Virus record (IMG/VR): IMGVR_UViG_3300017917_001342
Coordinates: 62,001-126,000 of that record
Strand: one strand, 5' to 3'
Length of the DNA stretch: 64,000 bases
Made by a program: the position numbers and the translations under genes. Positions 40,500 through 64,000 of this stretch are shown here, piece by piece. Positions within the stretch are counted from its first letter, which is position 1. The number at the start of each line of letters is the position of its first letter. Under the pieces are notes generated by a model. The model was given only the letters and a program-made list of their open reading frames with translations. It was not told the origin of the DNA and searched no databases.

Positions 40500-40574
40500 T
40501 TTACTTGACAGTACCGTAAAGGTATGTTAATGTGTCTTCGGCTATATCTCTCACCAACAATGGAGCAACGTTAC

Positions 40575-42029
40575 ATGATAAAGAGCAATAAATCCAAACC
40601 TATTGAACAGCAAACAATGAAAGATTTAGACCCTGTACGAATTTATCTAAAGGACGTTGGTAAAACTCCTCTGCTAAATCACGCTAAAGAAATTGAACTT
40701 AGCAAAACTATTGAAAGCAGTAACCAAACCATTATGGATACACTGTTTGCTATTCCGATGTCTGCGCAGACTGTTAACGATTGGATTACAGAAATTCTCA
40801 ATGGTGTTAAAACCGCAGATGAAGTATTTGATATTGAACTTCAAAGCGATGGTACCATACCTGATTCATTAATGACTAATCTGCAAGATATTAAAAATAT
40901 CTGCGACGCATATGTAAAAAATACCTCTGACAAACAACTCAAAATTCAATTGATTGATGCATTTAACAACACACCACTGTTGACATCTAGTATTGCAATT
41001 ATGATGGACAAAATCCAAGAAATTAACAAAAAGCTACTAGAAGGCGACGGTGCAATTATGCGCTTAGCAATTGATAGCGGCATTAATCGCAATGAATTTA
41101 TCAATTGCTATGTTGGACACGAAGATCTATTGTGGCTTGGTGATAAACAGGGTCCTGCTTGGGAAAAACTACAACGTAAACACAATCAGTTGATGATGCA
41201 TGTGGGTGCAATGCAAGAGCAAGCTGCAAACGCAGGTCTTACTATTAATGAATTGCGTACAGCAGTGAGAGTACTTCGCGCACAGGCAAAGATAAAAGAA
41301 GAAGCAATCAGTCATATGGTAAATGCAAACCTGCGACTGGTAGTTAGTATTGCTAAGAAATATAATCAAAATGGCAATACACAACTGTTAGATTTGATTC
41401 AAGAAGGCAACATCGGTCTTATCAAAGCAGTTGAAAAGTTCAAGTGGCAACTTGGCTATCGCTTTAGTACCTACGCAACTTGGTGGATCAGGCAAGCAAT
41501 TATCAAAACTGCAACTGAAAATAATCGTACTATTCGTATTCCAAGTCATGTGCTTGACACTATCAAAAAGATCAACACAGTCAGCAAAGAGTACATGTAC
41601 AGAACTGGTCGCGAACCGAGCAATGCAGAACTTGCAAAACTGTTGGATTGCGATGAAGAAAAAATTGCAAGAACTATGCGTGTTGCAAAAGATCCAATCA
41701 GTTTAGAAACACCAGTTGGCAACGACGAAGAAGGCAAACTTGGCAATCTCATTGAAGATGTTGAATCAGAAAACGCATTTGATCAAATTTCTCGTGCAGA
41801 TATCAACAAAGTTATCAGTGATGCACTTGAAGGTCTTAGCAGCCGTGAAGAACGTGTATTGCGTATGCGATTTGGCATCGGTACAATGCGCGAATACACA
41901 CTAGAAGAAATTGGTAACAAATTCAATGTTACCAGAGAACGTGTGCGTCAAATTGAAAACAAAGCACTTAGCAGGCTTAAACATCCGCAACGTGCTAAAG
42001 AGTTGCTAAACGCAATAACAGATCAATAA
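40575..42029 (+). CDS. rpoD: Primary-type RNA polymerase sigma70 factor lacking region 1.1
   Basis: Region 1.2 DPVRIYL, non-conserved region, region 2 [12 protein letters not shown]...[12 protein letters not shown], region 4 [18 protein letters not shown]. Confidence 0.93.
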
Positions 42030-52415: not shown

Positions 52416-54845
<2,430 letters not shown>

Positions 54846-55555: not shown

Positions 55556-56278
55556 ATGATATTGATTACCAGCGGTTGCAGCTTTAGCGAGTGCATTAGC
55601 AGTCACATAACAACTTGGCCCGGACATCTTGCAGAAAAATTACACTGCGAGCATGTGTCTCTTGGGTTAGGGTCACAGGGCAACGGATTAATCAGCAGAA
55701 AACTGTTGTACCAAGTACATCAACTGCTCAAAACACACAGCCCAGACGATTTACTAGTAGGTGTTATGTGGTCTCATCCAAACAGATGGGAATATTATCA
55801 AGACGTTAGACAAGAGTTTGAGTCTAATATAGACGGCTGGCAGTACAATCCAACCAGTGTAGCTGACTACAGCAATGGCGGATGGGTTATAACCAATCAT
55901 CATTGGCGGCATAAACTTTCTAATACCTATTACAAACTATATTACAATCACGTTTATGCACAGTTGCAGACACTTGAGCATATTTTACGTGTACAATGGT
56001 ATCTTAAACAGCAGAACATTCGTTACTTTATGAGTAACATAACTTCGCATGTGTTTGATGAACAAAGTATGCAAGATACAGAATGCCAACATCTTAGAGA
56101 AATGATAGATTGGACTAAATTTTTACCGTGCGACGGTGAATACGAATGGTGTAGAGACAACACTATCTATTCATTTAAACCGGGCGACAATCATCCCACT
56201 ACAAAAATGCATGAAGAATTTGTAAACCGTATGATTGTACCGTGGTTAGATACAACCTACGATATCAAGTGTGCATAG
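55556..56278 (+). CDS. SGNH/GDSL-like hypothetical protein
   Basis: GCSFS, G.GN, VMWS...R, HPT...H. Confidence 0.55.
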   Translation: MILITSGCSFSECISSHITTWPGHLAEKLHCEHVSLGLGSQGNGLISRKLLYQVHQLLKTHSPDDLLVGVMWSHPNRWEYYQDVRQEFESNIDGWQYNPTSVADYSNGGWVITNHHWRHKLSNTYYKLYYNHVYAQLQTLEHILRVQWYLKQQNIRYFMSNITSHVFDEQSMQDTECQHLREMIDWTKFLPCDGEYEWCRDNTIYSFKPGDNHPTTKMHEEFVNRMIVPWLDTTYDIKCA

Positions 56279-56492
56279 CAACAGCCATCTTGTATGCATC
56301 GTAGGCAAGTTTAACTTCGGGATTGGAATCACGTAATAGTTGTTCTTGTAATTCGCGGGCTCGGTGATCATCAATCCATTTGATAAGATTTTTAAAATGT
56401 TCTGTGTGTGATATATTCAATGTTTGACCGCCATAGGTGTCGCTAAGAGTTACTGTTAAATATTCGTCACCGTATACAGTCTTTATTGTCAT
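56265..56492 (-). CDS. Small hypothetical protein
   Basis: ORF track; GAGG RBS. Confidence 0.65.
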   Translation of the reverse strand: MTIKTVYGDEYLTVTLSDTYGGQTLNISHTEHFKNLIKWIDDHRARELQEQLLRDSNPEVKLAYDAYKMAVAMHT

Positions 56493-56578
56493 AATGCCCT
56501 CATTGTATTACACAGTTTAAAGACTGTGTTTATGGTAGTCAATAACACTAAATATCTCACGAATATAATGGATTTAGC

Positions 56579-57550
56579 ATGCGTTACTATGAGATTGCAA
56601 CAACTGAAAGTTTTCAAGAGTTAGATGAAGACTTAAAAAGCAAACTAGCAAAGTTAGCTAAACTAGGGGCCGCTGCCGGTACAGCAGCAACTCTTGGCTA
56701 TGGTGCAGGTGTTGCCACAAACCAACCCAGAGTAATACAGCAAACTCCTGCAAGTATAATGCGTGACATGCCTGCTGGACCAGATGAACCTGCTGGCTAC
56801 ACTGTAGACAAAAAAGACACTGCATTGTCAACTTCGCTTAGACCTAAACCACGACCTGCAGATTTGTCAGCACCTGCTGGCAAAGGTACAGCAGCAAAGC
56901 CAGCAGATAACAAAGTTAACGTTCTTACACCTGGTCCGGATACCGTTCGTCCACAGCCAAGACCTTGGACCAAAGATATGATGACGGTTGATCCAAAACT
57001 ACAAGCCGCTGCCGATGCTGCAAATGCACCTAACATGGTAGATAATGTAAGCGACAATGTCGAAGTTGAAAACATGCTAAGAGACGCAGCCAAAAAAGCA
57101 GGTATGACGGACGTTGAAATACGTGCATTTTTAGCACAGGCAAATCACGAAAGCCATAATTTCAACAGTACTAAAGAATATGGCACTAAACGCTACTTTA
57201 GACACAACTATGATATCAGGCACAATCCGCGAGTAGCTAAACTATTAGGGAACACCGAACCAGGTGATGGTGTAAAATATCACGGCCGCGGATACCTACA
57301 GATCACAGGTCGTTACAACTATGCGGCTGCTGGAGAAGCACTGGGATTACCTCTGTTAGATCAACCAGAACTGCTAGAAGATCCAAAAATAGCAGCCGAA
57401 GCATCTGTATGGTTCTGGATGTGGAGAGTTCATCAAAATGTACGTAACATGTATGATGTTAAAGAAGTAACCTACATGATAAACAAAGAGTTAACCGATC
57501 TTGAGAAGCGCGAAGAACTGTTTGACCTTTACAAAAATCTCAAAGTTTGA
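56579..57550 (+). CDS. Glycoside hydrolase family 19 (lysozyme/chitinase-like), probably virion-associated
   Basis: FLAQANHES, LGNT.PGDG..YHGRGYLQITGRYNY; late promoter upstream. Confidence 0.85.
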   Translation: MRYYEIATTESFQELDEDLKSKLAKLAKLGAAAGTAATLGYGAGVATNQPRVIQQTPASIMRDMPAGPDEPAGYTVDKKDTALSTSLRPKPRPADLSAPAGKGTAAKPADNKVNVLTPGPDTVRPQPRPWTKDMMTVDPKLQAAADAANAPNMVDNVSDNVEVENMLRDAAKKAGMTDVEIRAFLAQANHESHNFNSTKEYGTKRYFRHNYDIRHNPRVAKLLGNTEPGDGVKYHGRGYLQITGRYNYAAAGEALGLPLLDQPELLEDPKIAAEASVWFWMWRVHQNVRNMYDVKEVTYMINKELTDLEKREELFDLYKNLKV

Positions 57551-57597
57551 TGTTGACATTGAGATAATATTCAACTAAGTTATACACATAACGGTTT

Positions 57598-57674
57598 GGG
57601 GGGTTAGCTCAATTGGTTAGAGCGTCGGACTCATAATCCGCAGGTTATCGGTTCGAGTCCGGTACCCCCTACCA
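57598..57674 (+). tRNA. tRNA with CAT anticodon (probably Ile2, otherwise elongator Met)
   Basis: Full cloverleaf, CTCATAA loop, TTCGA, CCA end. Confidence 0.88.
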
Positions 57675-57679
57675 AAACT

Positions 57680-57754
57680 GCGTATGTGGTCCAGACAGAT
57701 GGGCACAGGATTCTAAACCCTAGGAGGCAGGCGCAATACCTGTCATGCGCACCA
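57680..57754 (+). tRNA. Amber-suppressor-type tRNA (anticodon CTA), atypical
   Basis: Acceptor GCGTATG/CATGCGC-A-CCA; D stem GTCC/GGGC; loop TT-CTA-AA at canonical spacing; T stem GCAGG/CCTGT. The anticodon stem has only 3 of 5 pairs. Confidence 0.65.
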
Positions 57755-57787
57755 TAAATAAAACAGTGTTTAAGGAGATATAACACC

Positions 57788-58420
57788 ATGTCGTAGATTG
57801 AAATTGCCTGTAACGATTTAGTATTCCACTTTAATAAAAAACACTTAGAAGATCCCACTATTCCTATGTGGGTTGTCAAGGCCAAAGGCGAAACCTATTA
57901 CGTTCATCATGTCACTAGCGACATGCCTTGGTCTACTAAAGAAACTCCAAACAACGCCAGTACCAAAGGCAGCATCAAATTTAAAAAGTGTCATCTTATC
58001 ATTGATGACAACAACGAAGCTACAATTAAGCCGTTGACTATGCTTAATGCAATGCGCCTCAAAAAAACCGAGCCTAAGAAGATTCGGTTGATTATGGACT
58101 ATCGTAAGCACATAGACGAATTTATCGAATATTGCGACGAACAAAATATTCAACACGACGGTGTACATATACTTCCTGGCAGTTGCGGTTCTAGATACTA
58201 TGCAACAGAAATCAAAGAAGATGATCTATTGCTGTTGCGTATGTGGTTCCCACCGAAGATGTTTAGAGAATTGATGCCTAACGAGTATCTCTACAGCTAC
58301 TACGATAAGCATGCTGCGGGTGTTGAACCACCAGACTACGACGATGATGACTACGAAGATGATCTCGATGACGATACAGACGAAACGGTCACATCATACG
58401 AAGATCTCTATGAAAACTAA
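57788..58420 (+). CDS. Hypothetical protein with an in-frame TAG at codon 3 (MS*IEIACNDLVFHFNKKHLEDPTIPMWVVK...)
   Basis: TAAGGAG RBS at 57771-57777, ATG 57788, TAG 57794-57796; same frame as ORF 57866-58420. Confidence 0.7.
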
Positions 58421-58541
58421 GTAAAATCTGTCAACCAAAGAAAAAATTGTAAAAATTCCAGTATTTGGTTGACATATTTGTTATCGGCTGTATAAATAGA
58501 ATTGTTGACGCAGATAATTGCGTTGACCAAATAGGTTGGAA

Positions 58542-58685
58542 ATGAAACAAGAACTACTCATTAAAAGTTTATTGCAATGCGGTTATTGCGCCAAGCCACA
58601 GGCATGGCATGCGTATCCTCGTAGCATTATGACAAATAATGATCGCGTGGAGTTTTCAACAAGTGGGGTGGGGCGGATGGCCTAG
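58542..58685 (+). CDS. Putative leader peptide (47 aa, ends in TAG)
   Basis: Manual translation; follows promoters at ~58469-58500; precedes a terminator. Confidence 0.4.
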   Translation: MKQELLIKSLLQCGYCAKPQAWHAYPRSIMTNNDRVEFSTSGVGRMA

Positions 58686-58715
58686 CAGCGTAAGCAGCAA
58701 AGTAATCCAAAGCAC

Positions 58716-58745
58716 CCCGGGAATCGAAAGATTTCCGGGTTTTTT
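58716..58745 (+). terminator. Intrinsic terminator / possible attenuator
   Basis: CCCGGGAATC-GAAA-GATTTCCGGG followed by a T-run. Confidence 0.8.
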
Positions 58746-58987
58746 AATGAAACAAGGGAAGTATACTCCCTTCTTACTGTAGGTAAGTGTTGCGAAAGCA
58801 GCGTCCCATATAGGGAAAAAGCGTAGCTGACATTGAGTTGTGGTGATTGTATACTGTGCATGTGGATAAACCCCAGTGGCGATAACGCAGGGGAGAATAC
58901 ATGTGGTAGGTAAAAGACTACCTTGCGCCAACTCCCGAATTGCTGGGGCTTATAGGCGCGATTACAAATGGCAACCTTATTTTTTAC

Positions 58988-59071
58988 GCCCAGATGGTGG
59001 AACGGTAGACACACTGTCTTCAGGTGGCAGCGCCGAAAGGCATGTGAGTTCGAATCTCACTCTGGGCACCA
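58988..59071 (+). tRNA. tRNA-Leu(CAG)
   Basis: Cloverleaf with variable arm; TT-CAG-GT loop; CCA end. Confidence 0.92.
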
Positions 59072-59129
59072 AATTTGACAATAGCAAACACATAACACAC
59101 TATGTTAATGTAATTGCTGAGTAGATGTA

Positions 59130-59717
59130 ATGATTGAAAAATACATTCCTAAGTTTCTAGATACACTGTATGACAAACCTATACTGGATTTTTTCACACT
59201 TGAAGAGATTCGTGATGCGTTTCATTCAAATCAGATCATTAGCAAGAAACAAGCTGCAATTGCATTCAAGCATCTGCCTAAACAGACAAGAAATGTTCTG
59301 TATATAGGTTCGTGGATAGGGTTTTTAACGCATTACATTTGCGATAATTATCCGGATACATCAGTAACCGAACTAGACTTAGATGAACGGTGCAAACCAA
59401 TAAGCAAACGCTTTAATCAACAGTTTAGTAACTATATAGAATCATACACAGGTGATGTGTTTGACTTCGATAAGTTTGTTGACTATGACACAGTTATTAA
59501 CTTAAGCTGTGAACACATGTCTACAGACTGGTTTGATTTAATACCCGATGGTACAGACGTTGTGTTGCAATCAAATAACTTTGAAATACCACAACATACA
59601 AATACCTGCAAAACACTAAAAGAAATGTGTTGCAAGTATCCATTGTCGACTGTATATTACATAGACGAAATTGAACTTAACGTATACAGTCGTTTTACGT
59701 TAGCTGGCAAGAAATAA
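59130..59717 (+). CDS. SAM-dependent methyltransferase-like protein
   Basis: YIGSWIG, LDLD, INLSCEHM, LQSNN. Confidence 0.7.
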   Translation: MIEKYIPKFLDTLYDKPILDFFTLEEIRDAFHSNQIISKKQAAIAFKHLPKQTRNVLYIGSWIGFLTHYICDNYPDTSVTELDLDERCKPISKRFNQQFSNYIESYTGDVFDFDKFVDYDTVINLSCEHMSTDWFDLIPDGTDVVLQSNNFEIPQHTNTCKTLKEMCCKYPLSTVYYIDEIELNVYSRFTLAGKK

Positions 59718-59724
59718 ACAAAAT

Positions 59725-59798
59725 GGCCCGGTGGCGGAAAGGCTACGCACCGGATTGCAAATCCGAGTATGGGGGTTCGATTCCCTCCCGGGCCTCCA
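59725..59798 (+). tRNA. tRNA-Cys(GCA)
   Basis: Cloverleaf; U73; CCA end. Confidence 0.92.
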
Positions 59799-59889
59799 AT
59801 CGTACAGTAGTTGTAGAGACCATTCAGCGTATGCCGAGTAGTAAGGGCACAGCGGGAATGAGACACGGCTACTGTGCATGACGTTTTGA

Positions 59890-60089
59890 TAAGTTAAAAG
59901 CAATTTGCGTGCCGGAACTGGTATACGGCGGTGTGGTCTAAGCCAATATGGATAGGGTGTGTAATGCTAATAAACACCTTTGCGCTCGTTGATGTACAAA
60001 CATCCGATGGCGATAACTACCGGTGCTGAACAGCGCAACGTAACAGCACAGTGTTGGTTCGATCCCAACTGCAAATTGTTTTTAACTTA
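59890..60089 (+). ncRNA. tRNA-scaffold ncRNA with a ~105-nt insert and a 19-bp closing stem, no CCA
   Basis: D-arm CCGGAACTGGTATACGG; T-arm GTTGG-TTCGATC-CCAAC; stem TAAGTTAAAAGCAATTTGC/GCAAATTGTTTTTAACTTA. Confidence 0.55.
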
Positions 60090-60156
60090 ACAAAAAAATG
60101 CTGTTGACAAGCCAAACATACGGTGCTAAGTTAACAATATGAAAACAAAACAAATG

Positions 60157-60186
60157 GTTAGCAGTTGCTAACAAGCTCTTTGAAAA
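60157..60186 (+). promoter_or_regulatory. rrn-like boxB hairpin plus boxA antitermination element
   Basis: GTTAGCA-GT-TGCTAAC hairpin, then GCTCTTTGAAAA, downstream of a TTGACA promoter (~60104). Confidence 0.55.
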
Positions 60187-60208
60187 TTAAATTCGGAAAC
60201 AGATGAAA

Positions 60209-60361
60209 TAATTCTGTTTTCAACAGTACAAGGGTTTTAAATTCATACCGGCCTTGGTAAGCTTGTATGAAGACCTGCTACAACCGGACGCCTACCAAGA
60301 GGTGACAAGGGAGAAGGTGCAACATAGGTGCGTTGCAATTGTACTGCTGAAAACAGAGTTA
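60209..60361 (+). ncRNA. Structured ncRNA closed by a ~22-bp stem
   Basis: ATTCTGTTTTCAACAGTACAA/TTGTACTGCTGAAAACAGAGT; internal hairpins and a possible CTTGGTA/TACCAAG pseudoknot. Confidence 0.55.
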
Positions 60362-60788
60362 ATGGTAGTTTGCTGTTAGTTCTAACAGCATTTGGTGATT
60401 AGACCTTGTAGATATAAGGTTACTAATAGCTAAACCAAAGTTAACTATGATTATAAAAGGTAATAGAATAGACCAAAGCTTTTTTAGCATTGTCTATTTA
60501 TAGGTTCAGACAGAATGCATGAGTTCACAGCGTTCTCTAGCGTAGGTATGTGGATACTACTGTGATTACTTAACCGTTCGAATCGGTGAGTCGACTAGGG
60601 CATGCATTTTGTTTGTTAGAATTGTGAGCGAGAGAAAGGCTGCATTGAGAGAACAGTTGTCTTTTACGGCATGTGGCAACACATTAGCTTAGGTTAGGCA
60701 TATGCTGTAGAAGGTGCAGTGGCTAGCTATCGAGCAAGTAAGCCTTATAGTTCAGCTATAAGCGTTAGATAGACACATAAAAATTTGT

Positions 60789-60823
60789 TGCGGGGTAGAG
60801 CAGTCTGGTAGCTCGCTTGGCTC
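60789..60823 (+). pseudogene. 5' half of tRNA-fMet, truncated at the anticodon loop
   Basis: TGCGGGGTAGAGCAGTCTGGTAGCTCGCTTGGCTC, then an abrupt switch to the late promoter and nuclease gene. Confidence 0.8.
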
Positions 60824-60841
60824 TGAAATGATAAATACACT

Positions 60842-61378
60842 ATGAAATATACAATTTATCAAATTACAAACACATTAAACGGTAAGATTTACATAGGTAA
60901 ACATCAAACCAAAAACATCAATGATGGATATTTTGGTAGTGGTGTAGCGTTAAGGAACGCTGTAAAGAAATATGGCAAAGAACACTTTGTAAAAGAAATA
61001 CTGTTTGTATTTGATTCTGAAAAAGAAATGAATGCAAAAGAACGAGAACTTATTACAGAAGAATTTGTAAACCGTGCAGATACTTATAATTTAGGTGTTG
61101 GCGGCGAAGGTGGCCCACACTTTAAAGGTAAGTCGCATTCTACAGAAAGCATTGCCAAGAGGACTGAAAGCCGAAAAGGCTTAAAATTGTCAGACGATGC
61201 AAGACAAAAGATATCCGAGTCTAATAGGCGTAGAACTATTAGCGATGAAACTAGAAAGAAACTTGCTGAAAAAGCAAGATTACGTAAACAAACAGACGAA
61301 ACTAAAAAGAAGCTATCAGAAATAGCTAAACGCAAATTATTGCGGGGTGGAGAAGAGGTTATCTCGTCGGGCTCATAA
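60842..61378 (+). mobile_element. Free-standing GIY-YIG homing endonuclease (Seg-like) with NUMOD3 repeats
   Basis: TIYQITN..NGKIYIGKH, YFGSG, E.E, YN...GG; repeats HSTES / SDDARQKISE / SDETRKKL. Confidence 0.88.
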
Positions 61379-61416
61379 CTCGAAGATCAGTGGTTCAAAT
61401 CCACTCCCCGCAACCA
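61341..61416 (+). tRNA. tRNA-Met(CAT), initiator-like, overlapping the nuclease 3' end
   Basis: TGCGGGG acceptor; TCGGG-CTCATAA-CTCGA; TTCAAAT T-loop; CCA end. Confidence 0.88.
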
Positions 61417-61460
61417 AAGAAAACTAGCGCAGGATGATGAATCCGTAAGACGCAAGCAAC

Positions 61461-61536
61461 ACGGTACTGCATAAGCGAGGCTTAAGCATAAATGCAGTTA
61501 AATCGCTAACGGGCAGCGGTTAGTAGAGCCAAACAC
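61461..61536 (+). ncRNA. Repeated RNA motif, copy 1
   Basis: CGGTACTG-stem-CAG(T/C)TAA(A/G)TC-GC-stem-GT-AGAGCCA(A/C)ACAC. Confidence 0.65.
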
Positions 61537-61576
61537 TTAATCTATTACGTTGCCGGGTTTCCGGCCATATTTAATC

Positions 61577-61641
61577 ACGGTACTGGCCTAGACCTAGGGC
61601 GCAGTTAAATCGCAGAGTGACGGATCTGTAGAGCCAAACAC
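61577..61641 (+). ncRNA. Repeated RNA motif, copy 2
   Basis: Same conserved junction sequences with different, still pairing stems. Confidence 0.65.
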
Positions 61642-61646
61642 ATTAT

Positions 61647-61726
61647 GGGGTCGTAGCTTAACACGACAAAAGCGGGGCGCTTGCGGCCCGAGATACGGGT
61701 ATGCGTTAGTCCCGTCGATTCCACCA
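61647..61726 (+). tRNA. Atypical tRNA-like gene with Ala identity (G3:U70, A73)
   Basis: GGGGTCG/CGATTCC-A-CCA; non-canonical anticodon loop GCTTGCG; 11-nt T loop. Confidence 0.5.
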
Positions 61727-61802
61727 AGTTAGCCGAAGCCCGCCGGCATAGAAAGCGTTTAAGGTTAAGTCCGATAACGTGGACAGTACGGGCACTACAT
61801 GT

Positions 61803-61878
61803 TCCTGGGTAGCTCAGTTGGTAGAGCGGCGAGCTGTTAACTCGTTGGTCGGGGGATCGTAACCCTCCTCAGGAGCCA
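61803..61878 (+). tRNA. tRNA-Asn(GTT)
   Basis: Cloverleaf; CT-GTT-AA loop; G73; CCA end. Confidence 0.9.
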
Positions 61879-61984
61879 AAATAATGCTATACATTCTGCG
61901 GTGTGTATGGCAGGGTAGGTGACGCAACGCTGTATAAAAATATAAGAACGAATACTTATAGCGGTGTCCCTACCTATAATATAC

Positions 61985-62076
61985 GGAGCGTTGGCTGAGA
62001 GGCTTAAAGCAGCGGTTTGCTAAACCGTCGAGGGTCGAAAGGCCCTCCACTGGTTCGAATCCAGTACGCTCCGCCA
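61985..62076 (+). tRNA. tRNA-Ser(GCT)
   Basis: Long variable arm; TT-GCT-AA loop; CCA end. Confidence 0.93.
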
Positions 62077-62152
62077 ATAAAGTTGTCATTAACCGGTTGA
62101 CACTGTAACCTAAACCATATAGTAATATGGCTGTAGCAAACGGAGAACTGCA

Positions 62153-62239
62153 ATGGATATGGACTTTGAAGACTATCTGAACTATGTTCGTCAACTGCTT
62201 GAGCAAGCCGAAGAAGACGGCTTTGAGATTGACGGATAA
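62153..62239 (+). CDS. Tiny acidic ORF (28 aa, MDMDFEDYLNYVRQLLEQAEEDGFEIDG)
   Basis: GGAG RBS; TTGACA promoter upstream. Confidence 0.45.
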   Translation: MDMDFEDYLNYVRQLLEQAEEDGFEIDG

Positions 62240-62246
62240 CTGACAC

Positions 62247-62309
62247 TCGGTACTGCTTGGCGGTTAAAGCAGCTAAGTCGCCTTTGTTCCTAGAGGTAGA
62301 GCCACACAC
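62247..62309 (+). ncRNA. Repeated RNA motif, copy 3
   Basis: CGGTACTGC...GCAGCTAAGTC-GCCTTT..AGAGGT-AGAGCCACACAC. Confidence 0.65.
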
Positions 62310-62314
62310 TTAAT

Positions 62315-62398
62315 GGGTCGTACCCCGCAAGGTGCGGGAGCGGACTGTAACTCCGTCGGGGAAACCCACGCTTGGTTCGATTCCAAGACGACCCACCA
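62315..62398 (+). tRNA. tRNA-Tyr(GTA)
   Basis: Cloverleaf with variable arm; CT-GTA-AC loop; CCA end. Confidence 0.92.
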
Positions 62399-62486
62399 AA
62401 TACTAGGTAAGGCCCAAGGTTGGATACACGGTTGTGTGAAGGTTTGGGAGAAGCAGCAGAGCGAGAGGATGGGGCTGCGTGCTGTA

Positions 62487-62765
62487 TTACTTTGCTTCTA
62501 ATGTATCGAGACGATGCTCTAACACTGCAATGGCTTGTGAATTAGCTGCAATTAGTTCTTTGAGGTCAGCTCTAAGCTTTTCTCGTTCTAATTCGCTGTT
62601 AACATTCATTGCCGGTTGATTGTCGTCTGTTACTACTACAGTGACTTTTGCTTTGAGATTGAGTATTTCTTCTTGCATGCTAATCATTGAGGATATAACG
62701 TAGATAACACCCGATGTTAGCACTGGCAGAAATGCAAATACTACTTTTTCTAAAATACTACTCAT
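62487..62765 (-). CDS. Small TM plus coiled-coil protein
   Basis: GGAG RBS; TAAATA promoter; antisense to the tRNA array. Confidence 0.7.
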   Translation of the reverse strand: MSSILEKVVFAFLPVLTSGVIYVISSMISMQEEILNLKAKVTVVVTDDNQPAMNVNSELEREKLRADLKELIAANSQAIAVLEHRLDTLEAK

Positions 62766-62801
62766 GCTATGCTCCAAATTGCATACATATTTAAAGATTT
62801 T

Positions 62802-62878
62802 TGTCCCTTAGCTCAGGTGGTTAGAGCGAAGAGCTGATAACTCTTAGGTCGGTGGTTCGAGTCCACCAGGGACAACCA
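62802..62878 (+). tRNA. tRNA-Ile(GAT)
   Basis: Cloverleaf; CT-GAT-AA loop; CCA end. Confidence 0.92.
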
Positions 62879-62887
62879 AACTAGGAG

Positions 62888-63097
62888 ATGTCAATGCCAC
62901 AATTTAACTGTGATAGAGAATGGTGGTCTACTTTAACCAAAGAAGAACAAGATCACTGGCTTGATTTTGCAGAAAGTTGTGGTGCGCCTAGAGAACCGTT
63001 TTTAGTTGATCGCAATCCGGATTATCCAGATTTGGTTTGCATGCCCTGTGTTACTGTTGATATAGACGATGACGAATTAATAGAATTACTCCCGTAG
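62888..63097 (+). CDS. Small acidic hypothetical protein; its stop codon overlaps tRNA-Glu
   Basis: AGGAG RBS; ORF track. Confidence 0.6.
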   Translation: MSMPQFNCDREWWSTLTKEEQDHWLDFAESCGAPREPFLVDRNPDYPDLVCMPCVTVDIDDDELIELLP

Positions 63098-63165
63098 GAC
63101 TACTCGGTGATGGTCGCTGGCCTTTCAAGTCGGAGAAATGGGTTCGAAACCCATACGGGGGACCA
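63089..63165 (+). tRNA. tRNA-Glu(TTC)
   Basis: CTCCCGT/ACGGGGG acceptor; CT-TTC-AA loop; TTCGAAA; CCA end. Confidence 0.82.
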
Positions 63166-63177
63166 AAATTACTATGT

Positions 63178-63335
63178 GCCTGCGATGGCGAAATTGGAGA
63201 GACGCACCGGCAGGTGAGGCCGGCGGGCTCTAAGGAGTAGCAGTGAGCGAATGGGAGTAGGTCCGGAACGAAACCGCTAGCAATAGAATGCGAAAGTTAC
63301 CCCACATGTAGGTTCAAATCCTACTCGCAGCACCA
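63178..63335 (+). ncRNA. tRNA-like RNA (158 nt) with ~80-nt expanded variable region and CCA end
   Basis: Leu-like D arm; CCGGC-AGGTGAG-GCCGG arm; GTAGG-TTCAAAT-CCTAC; CTGCGA/TCGCAG acceptor. Confidence 0.6.
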
Positions 63336-63342
63336 TTATTAT

Positions 63343-63440
63343 TGTCGTGTAACCTCTGTACGCTGTCGACATACGGGGGTATAGATAGGCTAGCGCAAGC
63401 CTGAAAGTGTATGTGGGTGCAACTCCTACCACGACAGCCA
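63343..63440 (+). ncRNA. tRNA-like RNA with a 9-bp D-position stem and CCA end
   Basis: TGTCGTG/CACGACA-G-CCA; T arm GTGGG-TGCAACT-CCTAC. Confidence 0.55.
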
Positions 63441-63456
63441 AACAAAAGGTTCGAGA

Positions 63457-63621
63457 ATGAATGAAGAATTATTAAAACAAGCAGAAATTGCATTGGGATC
63501 GTCATTCCGTCTTATGGAACAATATTACTTCTTAAAAAAACGCGGCTGGCATTGTTATTGGAATCTAGATACTGCTATTGCGCATGCAGCAAAAAATGTT
63601 AAATCATTGATTTGGTGTTAA
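63457..63621 (+). CDS. Small hypothetical protein (54 aa, MNEELLKQAEIALG...)
   Basis: Manual translation. Confidence 0.45.
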   Translation: MNEELLKQAEIALGSSFRLMEQYYFLKKRGWHCYWNLDTAIAHAAKNVKSLIWC

Positions 63622-63631
63622 TACCAATCAT

Positions 63632-63707
63632 CCCTAGGTAGCTCAGTTGGTAGAGCACGTGCCTGAAGAGCATGGTGTCGGCGGTTCGATCCCGTCCCTA
63701 GGGGCCA
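63632..63707 (+). tRNA. tRNA-Phe(GAA)
   Basis: Cloverleaf; CT-GAA-GA loop; CCA end. Confidence 0.88.
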
Positions 63708-63820
63708 TTAGATCAAGTCTAGCTGATCTCGAAATAAGCTAGACCCGCTCCTGCAAGAGGATATACAGTTGTTCGAGCGACTGTATGTGGGATCGTTCCC
63801 CACCAGGAGTATCAAATATC

Positions 63821-63903
63821 GCGGGCGTGGTGGAATGGTAGACACAGGAGACTTAAAATCTCCCGCTTGATGCATGTCGGTTCGAGTCCGACCGCCCGCA
63901 CCA
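63821..63903 (+). tRNA. tRNA-Leu(TAA)
   Basis: Cloverleaf with variable arm; CT-TAA-AA loop; CCA end. Confidence 0.92.
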
Positions 63904-63948
63904 AAATATAAGGTACGATAAATACTCACATAATTGGGAGTATTGGTT

Positions 63949-64000
63949 ATGCCTAGTAGAGAATTGCCGTGGATAGCAGAAGGTAAAACTGTTTTTGGTT
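63949..64000 (+). CDS. 5' end of a late gene (MPSRELPWIAEGKTVFG...), possibly TIGR02594-like
   Basis: ATAAATA promoter; GGAG RBS; truncated by the window end. Confidence 0.45.
   Translation, partial: MPSRELPWIAEGKTVFG

What the first reader, a model, noticed from the sequence alone, without database searches (positions are those of the whole stretch)
60789..61416. GIY-YIG nuclease inserted at the tRNA-fMet anticodon and encoding a replacement tRNA in its own 3' end
Seen in sequence: an orphan 5' half of tRNA-fMet stops at ...GGCTC. A late promoter and the nuclease ORF follow. The last 12 codons of the ORF (LRGGEEVISSGS) are the 5' half of a second, sequence-divergent tRNA-Met, and the ORF stop codon lies inside the CTCATAA anticodon loop. 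Splicing is unlikely because the orphan CTTGG does not pair with the downstream CTCGA. Inference: intronless homing that replaces the target with a cleavage-resistant allele. tRNA processing would also cut the nuclease mRNA, which could limit its expression.
Basis: partly seen in the sequence, partly recalled or inferred. Interest (0 to 1): 0.6.

Follow-up and report, generated by a model that had tools for sequence, protein, structure and literature searches.

The report
Nuclease gene splitting a phage initiator tRNA
A selfish SegB-like nuclease gene has recently inserted into the anticodon loop of a giant phage's initiator tRNA gene. It brought its own replacement front half of the tRNA, so the gene still works without any splicing, and the same arrangement recurs in many uncultured phages.

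Summary
An orphan 5' half of an initiator-type tRNA (60789-60823, T1 to C34) is followed by a late-promoter-like GATAAATA. Next comes a 178-aa GIY-YIG/NUMOD3 ORF (60842-61378), then a complete tRNA-Met(CAT) (61341-61416). The first 38 nt of that tRNA encode the ORF's last 12 codons, and the stop codon is the TAA of the CTCATAA loop.

A near-identical nuclease-free genome in another metagenome (run X4) matches the window with 0 differences up to 60823, then continues with the intact anticodon loop. A more distant nuclease-free relative (L001) carries the uninterrupted tRNA at the syntenic site, with a 5' half identical to the orphan.

The nuclease is 41% identical to T4 SegB. It belongs to a well-supported subclade in which 15 of 16 sampled members are linked to a tRNA-Met. 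At least nine distinct members show the same junction (…YTC|TGA…), with different orphan sequences that keep D-stem pairing through compensatory changes.

Still untested are where the enzyme cuts, whether the replacement allele resists it, and whether tRNA processing limits its expression. It is a new variant of known kinds: SegB-type free-standing homing and fungal mitochondrial mORF gene hybrids.

The parts
60789..60823 (+). Orphan 5' half (nt 1-34 plus D-loop length variation; T1 to C34) of the resident initiator-type tRNA gene, cut off inside the anticodon CAT after C34
   Evidence: Read directly. It is 35/35 identical to the 5' half of intact tRNAs in L001:108-142, L116 and L117. The run X4 contig is identical up to 60823 and then continues with the intact loop.
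60824..60841 (+). Left end of the inserted cassette: TGAAAT followed by the late-promoter-like GATAAATA (60830-60837), 4 nt before the ATG, with no Shine-Dalgarno sequence
   Evidence: The junction YTC|TGA(A)..(T/G)ATAAATA is conserved in L002, L003, L007, L034, L036-L040 and L047. In this genome 20 of 39 (T/G)ATAAATA copies lie within 40 nt upstream of a long-ORF ATG.
60842..61378 (+). SegB-like free-standing homing endonuclease gene, 178 aa: GIY-YIG catalytic domain (aa 2-73) followed by about four NUMOD3-like repeats. This is the short variant, without the C-terminal domain of the long variants.
   Evidence: Pfam. 41% identity to T4 SegB, E 4e-34. Single copy in the 518,643-bp genome. All family-invariant residues are present. 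It lies inside the 99%-supported tRNA-Met clade.
61340..61378 (+). Overlap of ORF and tRNA: the last 12 codons plus the stop are read from tRNA nt 1-38. Anticodon CAT is at 61374-61376 and the stop TAA at 61376-61378.
   Evidence: L002, L034, L035 and L047 end in the same frame (..TCA TAA).
61341..61416 (+). Complete, CCA-encoding initiator-type tRNA-Met(CAT). Its 5' part, anticodon stem and variable loop came in with the cassette.
   Evidence: ARAGORN, Rfam 64 bits, cloverleaf minimum-energy fold, best E. coli match metY at 83%.
61379..61388 (+). Donor-derived tract to the right of the insertion point: 3' strand of the anticodon stem plus the variable loop (CTCGAAGATC here, CCAAGAGGTC in nuclease-free alleles). 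Identity to the resident allele resumes at 61389.
   Evidence: Alignment with L001 and the 13 nt that follow 60823 in the nuclease-free X4 contig.

Best explanation
The window lies in a 518-kb uncultured phage genome with 55 tRNA genes. A mobile cassette has inserted between C34 and A35 of the phage's resident initiator-type tRNA gene.

The cassette consists of a late-type promoter, a SegB-like GIY-YIG/NUMOD3 homing endonuclease gene, and a foreign copy of tRNA positions 1-34. The foreign copy came with a co-converted stretch up to about position 47. The resident 5' half is left upstream as a dead orphan. The cassette-borne 5' part joins the resident T arm and acceptor 3' strand to give a complete tRNA, so no splicing is needed.

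Inferred mechanism: in a mixed infection the nuclease cuts a naive initiator tRNA gene in or near the anticodon loop. The break is then repaired from the cassette-bearing genome, using the two tRNA halves and their flanks as homology arms. This copies the nuclease gene together with the replacement half.

The replacement half is strongly diverged from the orphan, with no identical run longer than 8 nt. This prevents loss of the cassette by direct-repeat recombination, and it may remove the nuclease's recognition sequence.

In this short variant the ORF runs into the tRNA and stops at the loop TAA. RNase P cleavage at 61340|61341 would therefore leave a stop-less nuclease mRNA (inferred).

Shown: the anatomy, the insertion into a previously intact gene, its recency and polymorphism, the foreign origin of the replacement, and the recurrence in a monophyletic nuclease clade. 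Inferred: the cut site, resistance of the replacement allele, promoter use, and any effect of tRNA processing on expression.
For: 1. **Nuclease-free alleles.** X4 contigs show 0 differences over 60000-60823 and then continue with ATAACCAAGAGGT. They have no depth over most of the ORF (60888-61035 and 61110-61331), and downstream flank contigs are present. L001 has the intact tRNA at the syntenic site, with the orphan's 5' half and a matching CCAAG strand.
2. **Polymorphism and recent spread.** In X3 the flanks have depth 30-50 while a nuclease contig has depth 4. In X2 the listed differences of the ORF-spanning contig piece fall downstream of the stop, whereas the upstream flank shows 13 differences and 7 gaps in 286 nt.
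3. **Family.** GIY-YIG plus NUMOD3, and 41% identity to T4 SegB. SegB is an experimentally shown tRNA-gene-cutting homing enzyme (PMC2330249).
4. **Recurrence.** Of about 100 homologue loci, most lie inside tRNA arrays on the tRNA strand. All 16 sampled tRNA-Met-linked members (L035 linked only through a degenerate tRNA-Met-like remnant) form one clade with SH-aLRT 99. At least nine distinct loci show an orphan 5' half ending YTC, followed by TGA(A)...ATAAATA, the nuclease gene and a tRNA-Met.
5. **Orphans come from different functional alleles.** D-stem cells are 85% paired, with changes on both sides at 3 of 4 pairs; 0 of 500 shuffles reach the covariation score.
6. **Serial invasion.** The L038 orphan resembles the window's replacement half (28/34) and the L037 orphan resembles L003's replacement half (27/36).
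7. **Not an intron.** There is no intron model hit and no room for a ribozyme.
8. **Surviving copies.** Both intact initiator-like genes of this genome share CTCGRAGATC after the loop. These are the replacement copy and the paralogue at genome 142156-142234. The invaded allele had CCAAGAGGTC there.
Against: - No cleavage data exist for this enzyme.
- T4 SegB recognises the T-loop motif and cuts at the 3' end of tRNA genes, not in the anticodon loop (PMC2330249). The assumed cut site therefore departs from the only characterised relative.
- The window's enzyme lacks the roughly 60-aa C-terminal domain of the long variants. A SegB shortened by 28 aa was non-toxic in E. coli (PMC13096335), so this copy may be weak or inactive.
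- In several loci (L002, L007, L034, L035, L037) the tRNA behind the nuclease gene is degenerate or undetectable, so the replacement is not always maintained.
- Anticodon-stem types that are replacements in one locus are orphans in another. This argues against a single simple 'resistant allele'.
- The nuclease-free evidence in X4 rests on short unitigs: 287 nt, with 13 nt beyond the junction.
- GATAAATA is one base off the T4 late consensus, and its 4-nt spacing would place the transcription start at or just inside the ATG.
Confidence: 0.7

Rival explanations
1. Fossil element. The insertion history is as described, but the 178-aa protein is a C-terminally truncated, inactive or nearly inactive remnant. 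It was produced by recombination between the nuclease gene's 3' region and the 5' end of the tRNA. The cassette now persists passively, or moves only with help in trans.
For: Long variants carry an extra C-terminal domain that the window lacks. In T6, microhomology between a tRNA 5' end and the segB 3' end yields a SegB shortened by 28 aa that is non-toxic (PMC13096335). Several clade loci show decayed tRNAs.
Against: The short form is an intact ORF in at least five distinct loci: window, L002, L034 and L035 at 56-63% identity, plus L047 at 69% over the N-terminal 98 aa. They carry 4-6 NUMOD3 repeats and keep all catalytic-domain invariants. The presence/absence polymorphism in near-identical genomes, and a near-identical ORF in more diverged flanks, point to recent movement.
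Confidence: 0.2
2. By-product of local rearrangement. SegB-type breaks within the phage's own tRNA array, followed by microhomology-mediated repair or segmental amplification, produced a partial tRNA duplicate beside a resident nuclease gene. There was no site-specific invasion of the anticodon loop.
For: SegB-dependent tandem amplification of a tRNA plus segB unit with a truncated SegB has been shown in T6 (PMC13096335). The region is rich in indels and small duplications.
Against: Near-identical genomes have no nuclease gene at the locus at all. The genome has a single copy. Orphan and replacement halves share only 23 of 35 positions, so they are not copies of one gene. The same junction position recurs with different orphan alleles in many lineages.
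Confidence: 0.07
3. An intron-like insertion that is removed at the RNA level, either as a group I intron or by another splicing route. This would join the orphan half to the downstream 3' half.
For: Group I introns with nuclease ORFs are known in the anticodon loop of cyanobacterial initiator tRNA genes (the I-Ssp6803I case; background knowledge).
Against: No intron family matched at E<=1. Only 18 nt lie outside the ORF between the orphan and the complete tRNA. CTTGG cannot pair with CTCGA. A complete tRNA already exists.
Confidence: 0.01
4. Assembly chimera formed across conserved tRNA sequence in the metagenome.
For: tRNA-fMet sequence is highly repeated across organisms in metagenomes, as shown by depth spikes at the tRNA bins.
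Against: A single 1367-nt contig from a different study (X2) spans flank, orphan, ORF, tRNA and downstream flank. The same architecture occurs in many independent contigs.
Confidence: 0.02

Closest known systems
T4 SegB and SegB-like free-standing GIY-YIG homing endonucleases of phage tRNA arrays (PMC2330249; PMC13096335)
   Same: 41% identical protein. Same catalytic domain. Located inside a tRNA array on the tRNA strand and tightly abutting the next tRNA. Absent from close relatives. Presumed double-strand-break repair homing with co-conversion.
   Different: SegB sits between intact tRNA genes and cuts at the 3' end of tRNA genes after recognising the T-loop motif. Here the cassette lies inside a tRNA gene at position 34|35, leaves an orphan half, and carries a replacement half. 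The clade is specific for initiator-type tRNA-Met.
Fungal mitochondrial mobile endonuclease ORFs (mORFs) that create gene hybrids: Allomyces macrogynus atp6; Glomus atp6, atp9, cox2, nad3 (PMC3630166)
   Same: A free-standing endonuclease ORF is inserted into a gene together with a foreign copy of the displaced gene part. The native part survives next to it as a pseudo-fragment identical to that of the ORF-less relative. The ORF may be fused in frame to the gene.
   Different: Those are protein genes in mitochondria, with the 3' (C-terminal) part replaced. Here a tRNA gene in a phage has its 5' part replaced (mirror image), and the ORF overlaps an RNA gene rather than a coding region.
I-Ssp6803I, the group I intron endonuclease of the cyanobacterial initiator tRNA gene (background knowledge; named in the papers listed)
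   Same: The target is the anticodon region of an initiator tRNA gene, and the selfish element sits in the anticodon loop.
   Different: That enzyme is a PD-(D/E)XK nuclease inside a self-splicing intron. Here there is a GIY-YIG enzyme, no intron, and function is kept by duplicating and replacing half of the gene.
Integrating elements that target tRNA genes and restore them from a copy in attP (background knowledge)
   Same: The inserted DNA carries a copy of part of the tRNA gene, so an intact gene is rebuilt at one junction and a fragment is left at the other.
   Different: Those use integrases and identical short repeats at the 3' end of the tRNA. Here a homing nuclease is used, the 5' half is replaced, and the two copies are strongly diverged.

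Membership tests
GIY-YIG homing endonuclease, SegB-like | GIY-YIG catalytic domain with conserved Tyr/Tyr/Glu/Asn positions | tested here: met
   Pfam PF01541 E 1.4e-6 and PF19835. Y6, Y17, G19, E67 and N83 are invariant in the family alignment.
GIY-YIG homing endonuclease, SegB-like | Sequence homology to T4 SegB | tested here: met
   41% identity over 171 aa, E 4e-34.
GIY-YIG homing endonuclease, SegB-like | Modular DNA-binding region (NUMOD3 or HTH) after the catalytic domain | tested here: inconclusive
   NUMOD3 E 3.4e-7, with about four repeats. The C-terminal domain present in the long variants is missing.
GIY-YIG homing endonuclease, SegB-like | Gene present or absent among otherwise homologous genomes, with the empty site intact | tested here: met
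   X4 near-identical nuclease-free contigs; L001 syntenic intact tRNA.
GIY-YIG homing endonuclease, SegB-like | Site-specific cleavage of the nuclease-free allele and nuclease-dependent unidirectional inheritance | not testable with these tools
   Needs the purified protein, or a co-infection or plasmid homing assay.
Group I intron in a tRNA anticodon loop | Ribozyme core and exon halves that form one tRNA after splicing | tested here: not met
   No intron family hit at E<=1 in 56000-64000. Only 18 nt lie outside the ORF. CTTGG and CTCGA do not pair.
mORF-type gene hybrid (endonuclease ORF plus foreign replacement gene fragment) | The native fragment is displaced and identical to that of the ORF-less relative, while the adjacent replacement fragment is diverged and completes the gene | tested here: met
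   The orphan is 35/35 identical to the L001 allele and to the X4 contig. The replacement shares 23 of 35 positions with it. The completed tRNA scores 64 bits.
Bacterial-type initiator tRNA | CAT anticodon and closest similarity to initiator rather than elongator tRNA-Met | tested here: met
   Best E. coli match is metY, between argG and rimP/nusA, at 83%, with a median of 4 places per genome.
Bacterial-type initiator tRNA | A11:U24 pair, 1:72 mismatch, and three G:C pairs at the bottom of the anticodon stem (background knowledge of E. coli tRNA-fMet) | tested here: inconclusive
   A11:T24 is present. Positions 1:72 form a U:A pair, not a mismatch. The stem has G29:C41, G30:U40 and G31:C39 (read).

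The most novel reading that the evidence does not exclude
A whole clade of SegB-like nucleases has become an 'intron without splicing' for initiator tRNA genes. The two halves of the conserved tRNA serve as portable homology arms, and the cassette carries its own diverged front half to keep the gene alive. Cassettes also invade one another's replacement alleles in series, so the replacement half of one cassette appears as the orphan of another. This would be an arms race of target and nuclease specificity written into tRNA genes. In the short variants the nuclease mRNA has no stop codon once RNase P has released the tRNA, so tRNA maturation, and possibly the phage's own tmRNA, would throttle the nuclease.
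Probability: 0.35. Interest if true: 0.75.

Novelty: new variant of a known kind. Interest (0 to 1): 0.6.

Why it matters
It shows a third way for a homing nuclease gene to sit inside an essential, conserved gene without destroying it. The known ways are splicing (introns, inteins) and staying in intergenic DNA; here the gene part it displaces is replaced.

That solution was known for protein genes in fungal mitochondria. I found no report of it for an RNA gene or in phages in the full-text library.

The case comes with a natural nuclease-plus and nuclease-minus pair of near-identical genomes, and with many diverged family members. The specificity of a tRNA-gene-cutting GIY-YIG enzyme and its co-evolution with the target can therefore be tested directly.

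It also bears on how the tRNA arrays of giant phages are shuffled and exchanged. For annotation, it shows that half-tRNAs beside nuclease genes are insertion scars, and that ORFs may legitimately end inside tRNA genes.

Tried and rejected
- **Cultured phages, DNA.** Megablast of the region found nothing. Distant blastn found only the catalytic-domain part of Seg-like genes.
- **Cultured phages, protein.** The nearest cultured-phage homologues (RB16-like, 62-64% in the N-terminal domain) lie between genes 23 and 24, not in tRNA genes. No cultured example of this clade was found, although records near the window may be masked.
- **Junction pattern scan of IMG/VR.** It gave one true hit (the L002 contig) and six chance hits.
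- **Second nuclease-plus/minus pair.** Searches using the orphan sequences of L002 and L036/L039 found only the nuclease-bearing contigs themselves.
- **Orphan allele in unrelated phages.** L116 and L117 carry the same orphan-type 5' half but are unrelated phages. Identity of the orphan to L001 alone is therefore weak evidence of recency; the X4 flank identity carries that argument.
- **RNA evidence.** One metatranscriptome (X15) held only conserved tRNA pieces and the downstream spacer 61461-61831, with nothing over the ORF. It is contig data, so it says nothing about starts, ends or level.
- **Spacer repeat.** The fold of the spacer repeat is not significant (z -0.76).
- **Other copies.** A genome-wide search found no second copy of the nuclease gene or of the junction motif.
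- **Rejected readings.** Intron, assembly chimera and local duplication; see the rival explanations.

Full report
**Setting**

The window is bases 62001-126000 of a single 518,643-bp virus contig. The contig has 40.7% G+C, 55 tRNA genes and a tmRNA. It comes from a pond metagenome. The finding lies in a long tRNA array that starts near window position 57600.

**What is in the sequence**

Reading the bases:
- 60789-60823 is the first 35 nt of a tRNA. It has a 7-nt acceptor strand, a D arm GAGC/GCTC, the anticodon-stem strand CTTGG and the loop start CTC.
- After C34 the tRNA stops and TGAAATGATAAATACACT follows.
- The ATG of a 178-codon ORF follows at 60842 (ORF 60842-61378).
- The ORF product has a GIY-YIG catalytic domain and NUMOD3 repeats.
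- A complete, CCA-encoding tRNA-Met(CAT) lies at 61341-61416. ARAGORN calls it, Rfam scores it 64 bits, and it folds as a cloverleaf.
- The ORF's last 12 codons are read from this tRNA's positions 1-35. Its stop codon TAA (61376-61378) is T36-A37-A38 of the anticodon loop.

The tRNA's best E. coli match is the initiator gene metY, at 83% identity. It has the initiator-typical A11:U24 pair, but a U1:A72 pair and one G:U pair in the anticodon stem.

The only adjustment is that the promoter-like octamer is GATAAATA rather than TATAAATA.

**Nuclease-free relatives**

*A distant relative.* An IMG/VR contig (L001, 158 kb) is a diverged relative. Its conserved intergenic stretches are 75-85% identical to the window, and it has the same downstream order: tRNA-Asn, Ser, Tyr, Ile, Glu. 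At the syntenic place it has one uninterrupted tRNA. The first 35 nt are identical to the window's orphan, and the 3' stem strand CCAAG pairs with the orphan's CTTGG.

*A near-identical genome.* This evidence is stronger. I laid contigs of other public runs on window 60000-62200. Run X4, a freshwater metagenome from a different study, gave these results:
- Its contigs show no difference from the window over 60000-60823.
- After 60823 they continue with ATAACCAAGAGGT, the intact anticodon loop and the CCAAG strand.
- X4 has no depth over most of the ORF (60888-61035 and 61110-61331). One bin, 61036-61109, has depth 6.8.
- X4 does have the downstream flank.

So a near-identical phage exists with the empty, intact site.

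*Other runs.*
- Run X3 has the flanks at depth 30-50 and a nuclease contig (61045-61367, 0 differences) at depth 4. This suggests a mixed population.
- Run X2 has a 1367-nt contig that spans flank, orphan, ORF, tRNA and downstream flank. That excludes an assembly chimera.
- In X2 the upstream flank is more diverged (13 differences and 7 gaps in 286 nt) than the ORF. The listed differences of that contig piece fall after the stop codon. This pattern is expected for a recently spreading element.

**Extent of the foreign DNA**

Compared with the nuclease-free allele, the window's complete tRNA differs in the D arm, both strands of the anticodon stem and the variable loop. After the loop it reads CTCGAAGATC where the nuclease-free allele reads CCAAGAGGTC. 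Identity resumes at the T stem, position 61389.

Orphan and replacement share only 23 of 35 positions, and I read no identical run longer than 8 nt. The replacement is therefore not a local duplicate. It arrived with the nuclease gene, together with about 13 nt of co-converted sequence to the right of the insertion point.

The opposite polarity is excluded. If the orphan had arrived with the cassette next to a resident complete tRNA, the empty sites would carry the replacement-type allele. They carry the orphan-type allele.

**The nuclease family**

- The protein is 41% identical to T4 SegB (E 4e-34).
- In T4, segB sits 41 nt after tRNA-Ile and 5 nt before tRNA-Arg.
- SegB is a proven homing enzyme. 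It recognises the T-loop motif GGTTCRANTCC and cuts at the 3' end of tRNA genes (PMC2330249).
- SegB homologues are known to be tRNA-linked across phages (PMC13096335).

I collected about 100 homologue loci from IMG/VR and JGI metagenomes. Most lie within tRNA arrays on the tRNA strand. They typically sit 50-70 nt after one tRNA and abut or overlap the next.

A tree of the catalytic domain places all 16 tRNA-Met-linked members, including the window, in one clade with SH-aLRT 99. One of them, L035, is linked only through a degenerate tRNA-Met-like remnant (Rfam 27.9 bits). The closest homologues in cultured phages (RB16-like, 62-64%) lie between capsid genes instead.

**The architecture recurs**

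Within that clade the window's arrangement appears again and again. The order is:
1. An orphan tRNA-Met 5' half ending YTC.
2. TGA(A)… followed by (T/G)ATAAATA.
3. The nuclease gene.
4. A tRNA-Met.

It occurs in the window, L002, L034 and L036-L040. It occurs in degenerate or partial form in L003/L007, L043 and L047. L048 has an orphan half but a different junction.

The orphans differ in sequence yet keep a paired D stem:
- 85% of cells are paired.
- 3 of 4 pairs show changes on both sides.
- The covariation score exceeds all 500 shuffles and all slid controls.

Drift from one ancestral pseudo-fragment would not preserve pairing. The orphans therefore derive from different functional tRNA alleles, which means the same site was invaded repeatedly.

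Two orphans resemble the replacement halves of other cassettes. L038's orphan matches the window's replacement at 28/34, and L037's orphan matches L003's replacement at 27/36. This suggests serial invasions.

**Two length classes of the nuclease**

- **Long variants** (235-256 aa) carry an extra C-terminal domain and stop shortly before the tRNA: 5-24 nt in most loci, about 50 nt in L036. Examples are L003-L007, L036, L038, L039 and L043.
- **Short variants** (166-201 aa) run into the tRNA and stop at the loop TAA in the same frame. These are the window, L002, L034, L035 and L047.

The overlap is thus a recurrent but not universal feature. It resembles the T6 escape mutants, in which microhomology between a tRNA 5' end and the segB 3' end produced a shortened SegB (PMC13096335). 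That shortened SegB was non-toxic, so the activity of the window's short enzyme cannot be assumed.

On the other side, the short form survives as an intact ORF in at least five distinct loci: the window, L002, L034 and L035 at 56-63% identity, plus L047. It carries 4-6 NUMOD3 repeats. The population data also indicate recent movement.

In several loci the tRNA behind the nuclease gene is degenerate (L002, L007, L034, L035, L037). The window's copy is among the best preserved.

**Expression signals**

(T/G)ATAAATA is not over-represented in the genome. However, 20 of its 39 copies lie within 40 nt upstream of a long-ORF ATG. This fits a T4-type late promoter.

In the clade the octamer usually ends 4-5 nt before the ATG, with no ribosome-binding site. 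By the T4 rule, recalled from background knowledge, transcription starts about 6 nt after the octamer. That would give a leaderless mRNA. This is inference.

RNase P processing of the tRNA would cut the nuclease mRNA at 61340|61341 and remove its stop codon. That too is inference. The one RNA run examined held no contig over the ORF.

**Mechanism and what is known**

The best-supported reading is a SegB-like homing cassette that sits inside the initiator tRNA gene at position 34|35 and keeps the gene functional by carrying a replacement 5' part.

Its closest analogues are the SegB-type free-standing nucleases of phage tRNA arrays and, for the logic of the insertion, the fungal mitochondrial mORF gene hybrids. 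In those hybrids an endonuclease ORF brings a foreign C-terminal gene part. The native part is displaced and remains identical to that of the ORF-less relative (PMC3630166). The window shows the mirror image, in an RNA gene, in a phage.

The cyanobacterial initiator-tRNA intron nuclease I-Ssp6803I targets the same region of the same kind of gene, but through a self-splicing intron.

Full-text searches found no description of a nuclease gene inserted in a phage tRNA gene with a replacement half.

**Open points**

- The cut site is unknown, and SegB itself cuts elsewhere in tRNA genes.
- Whether the replacement allele and the paralogue at genome 142156-142234 are resistant is unknown. Both share CTCGRAGATC after the loop, unlike the invaded allele.
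- Whether the short enzyme is active is unknown.
- The nuclease-free evidence in X4 rests on short unitigs.

Noticed in passing
window 40524-42029 (+): 501-aa ORF with sigma-70 regions 1.2, 2, 3 and 4, an RpoD-like sigma factor encoded by the phage.
   Followed up: no
window 61461-61641; also L001:200-470: The spacer between tRNA-fMet and tRNA-Asn holds a roughly 105-nt tandem duplication, each unit ending GAGCCAAACAC. A run X4 contig skips 61522->61628, so it has one copy. A contig of an RNA-seq run (X15) covers 61461-61831. The fold is not significant (z -0.76). Function unknown.
   Followed up: partly
window about 60516-60770, and 60353-60509: About 255 nt upstream of the orphan are absent from L001. 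They contain a T-arm-like ACCGTTCGAATCGGT (60573-60587), possibly another tRNA remnant. Relatives in runs X2 and X3 lack 60353-60509 (157 nt). The array is rich in indels.
   Followed up: no
window 57680-57751 and 61647-61723: Two weak tRNA-model hits (32.6 and 26.3 bits) that ARAGORN does not call. They may be unusual or decaying tRNAs.
   Followed up: no
genome C1:142156-142234 (outside the window): A second initiator-like tRNA whose last 56 nt are 96% identical to the window's complete tRNA. Its D arm differs and no nuclease gene lies beside it.
   Followed up: partly
genome C1:129519-129593 and 311343-311751 (outside the window): A tRNA with a CTA anticodon (amber-reading) and a phage-encoded tmRNA with tag ANDNVAPSYALAA. 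The tmRNA is relevant to the idea that RNase P cleavage leaves a stop-less nuclease mRNA.
   Followed up: no
L035:2025-2432: A GOLLD RNA (314 bits) lies directly upstream of the nuclease homologue in this metagenomic contig.
   Followed up: no
whole genome; window 60830-60837: 20 of 39 (T/G)ATAAATA copies lie within 40 nt upstream of a long-ORF ATG. In the nuclease clade the octamer ends 4-5 nt before the ATG without a ribosome-binding site, which suggests leaderless late transcripts.
   Followed up: partly
L038:2425-2458 and L037:1831-1866: The orphan halves in these loci resemble the replacement halves of other cassettes: the window's at 28/34 and L003's at 27/36. This would be expected if cassettes invade each other's replacement alleles.
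   Followed up: partly
window 52416-54845 (-) and 56579-57550 (+): An 809-aa ORF with collagen triple-helix repeats, and a 323-aa ORF with a chitinase class I (glycoside hydrolase 19) domain, lie just upstream of the tRNA array.
   Followed up: no
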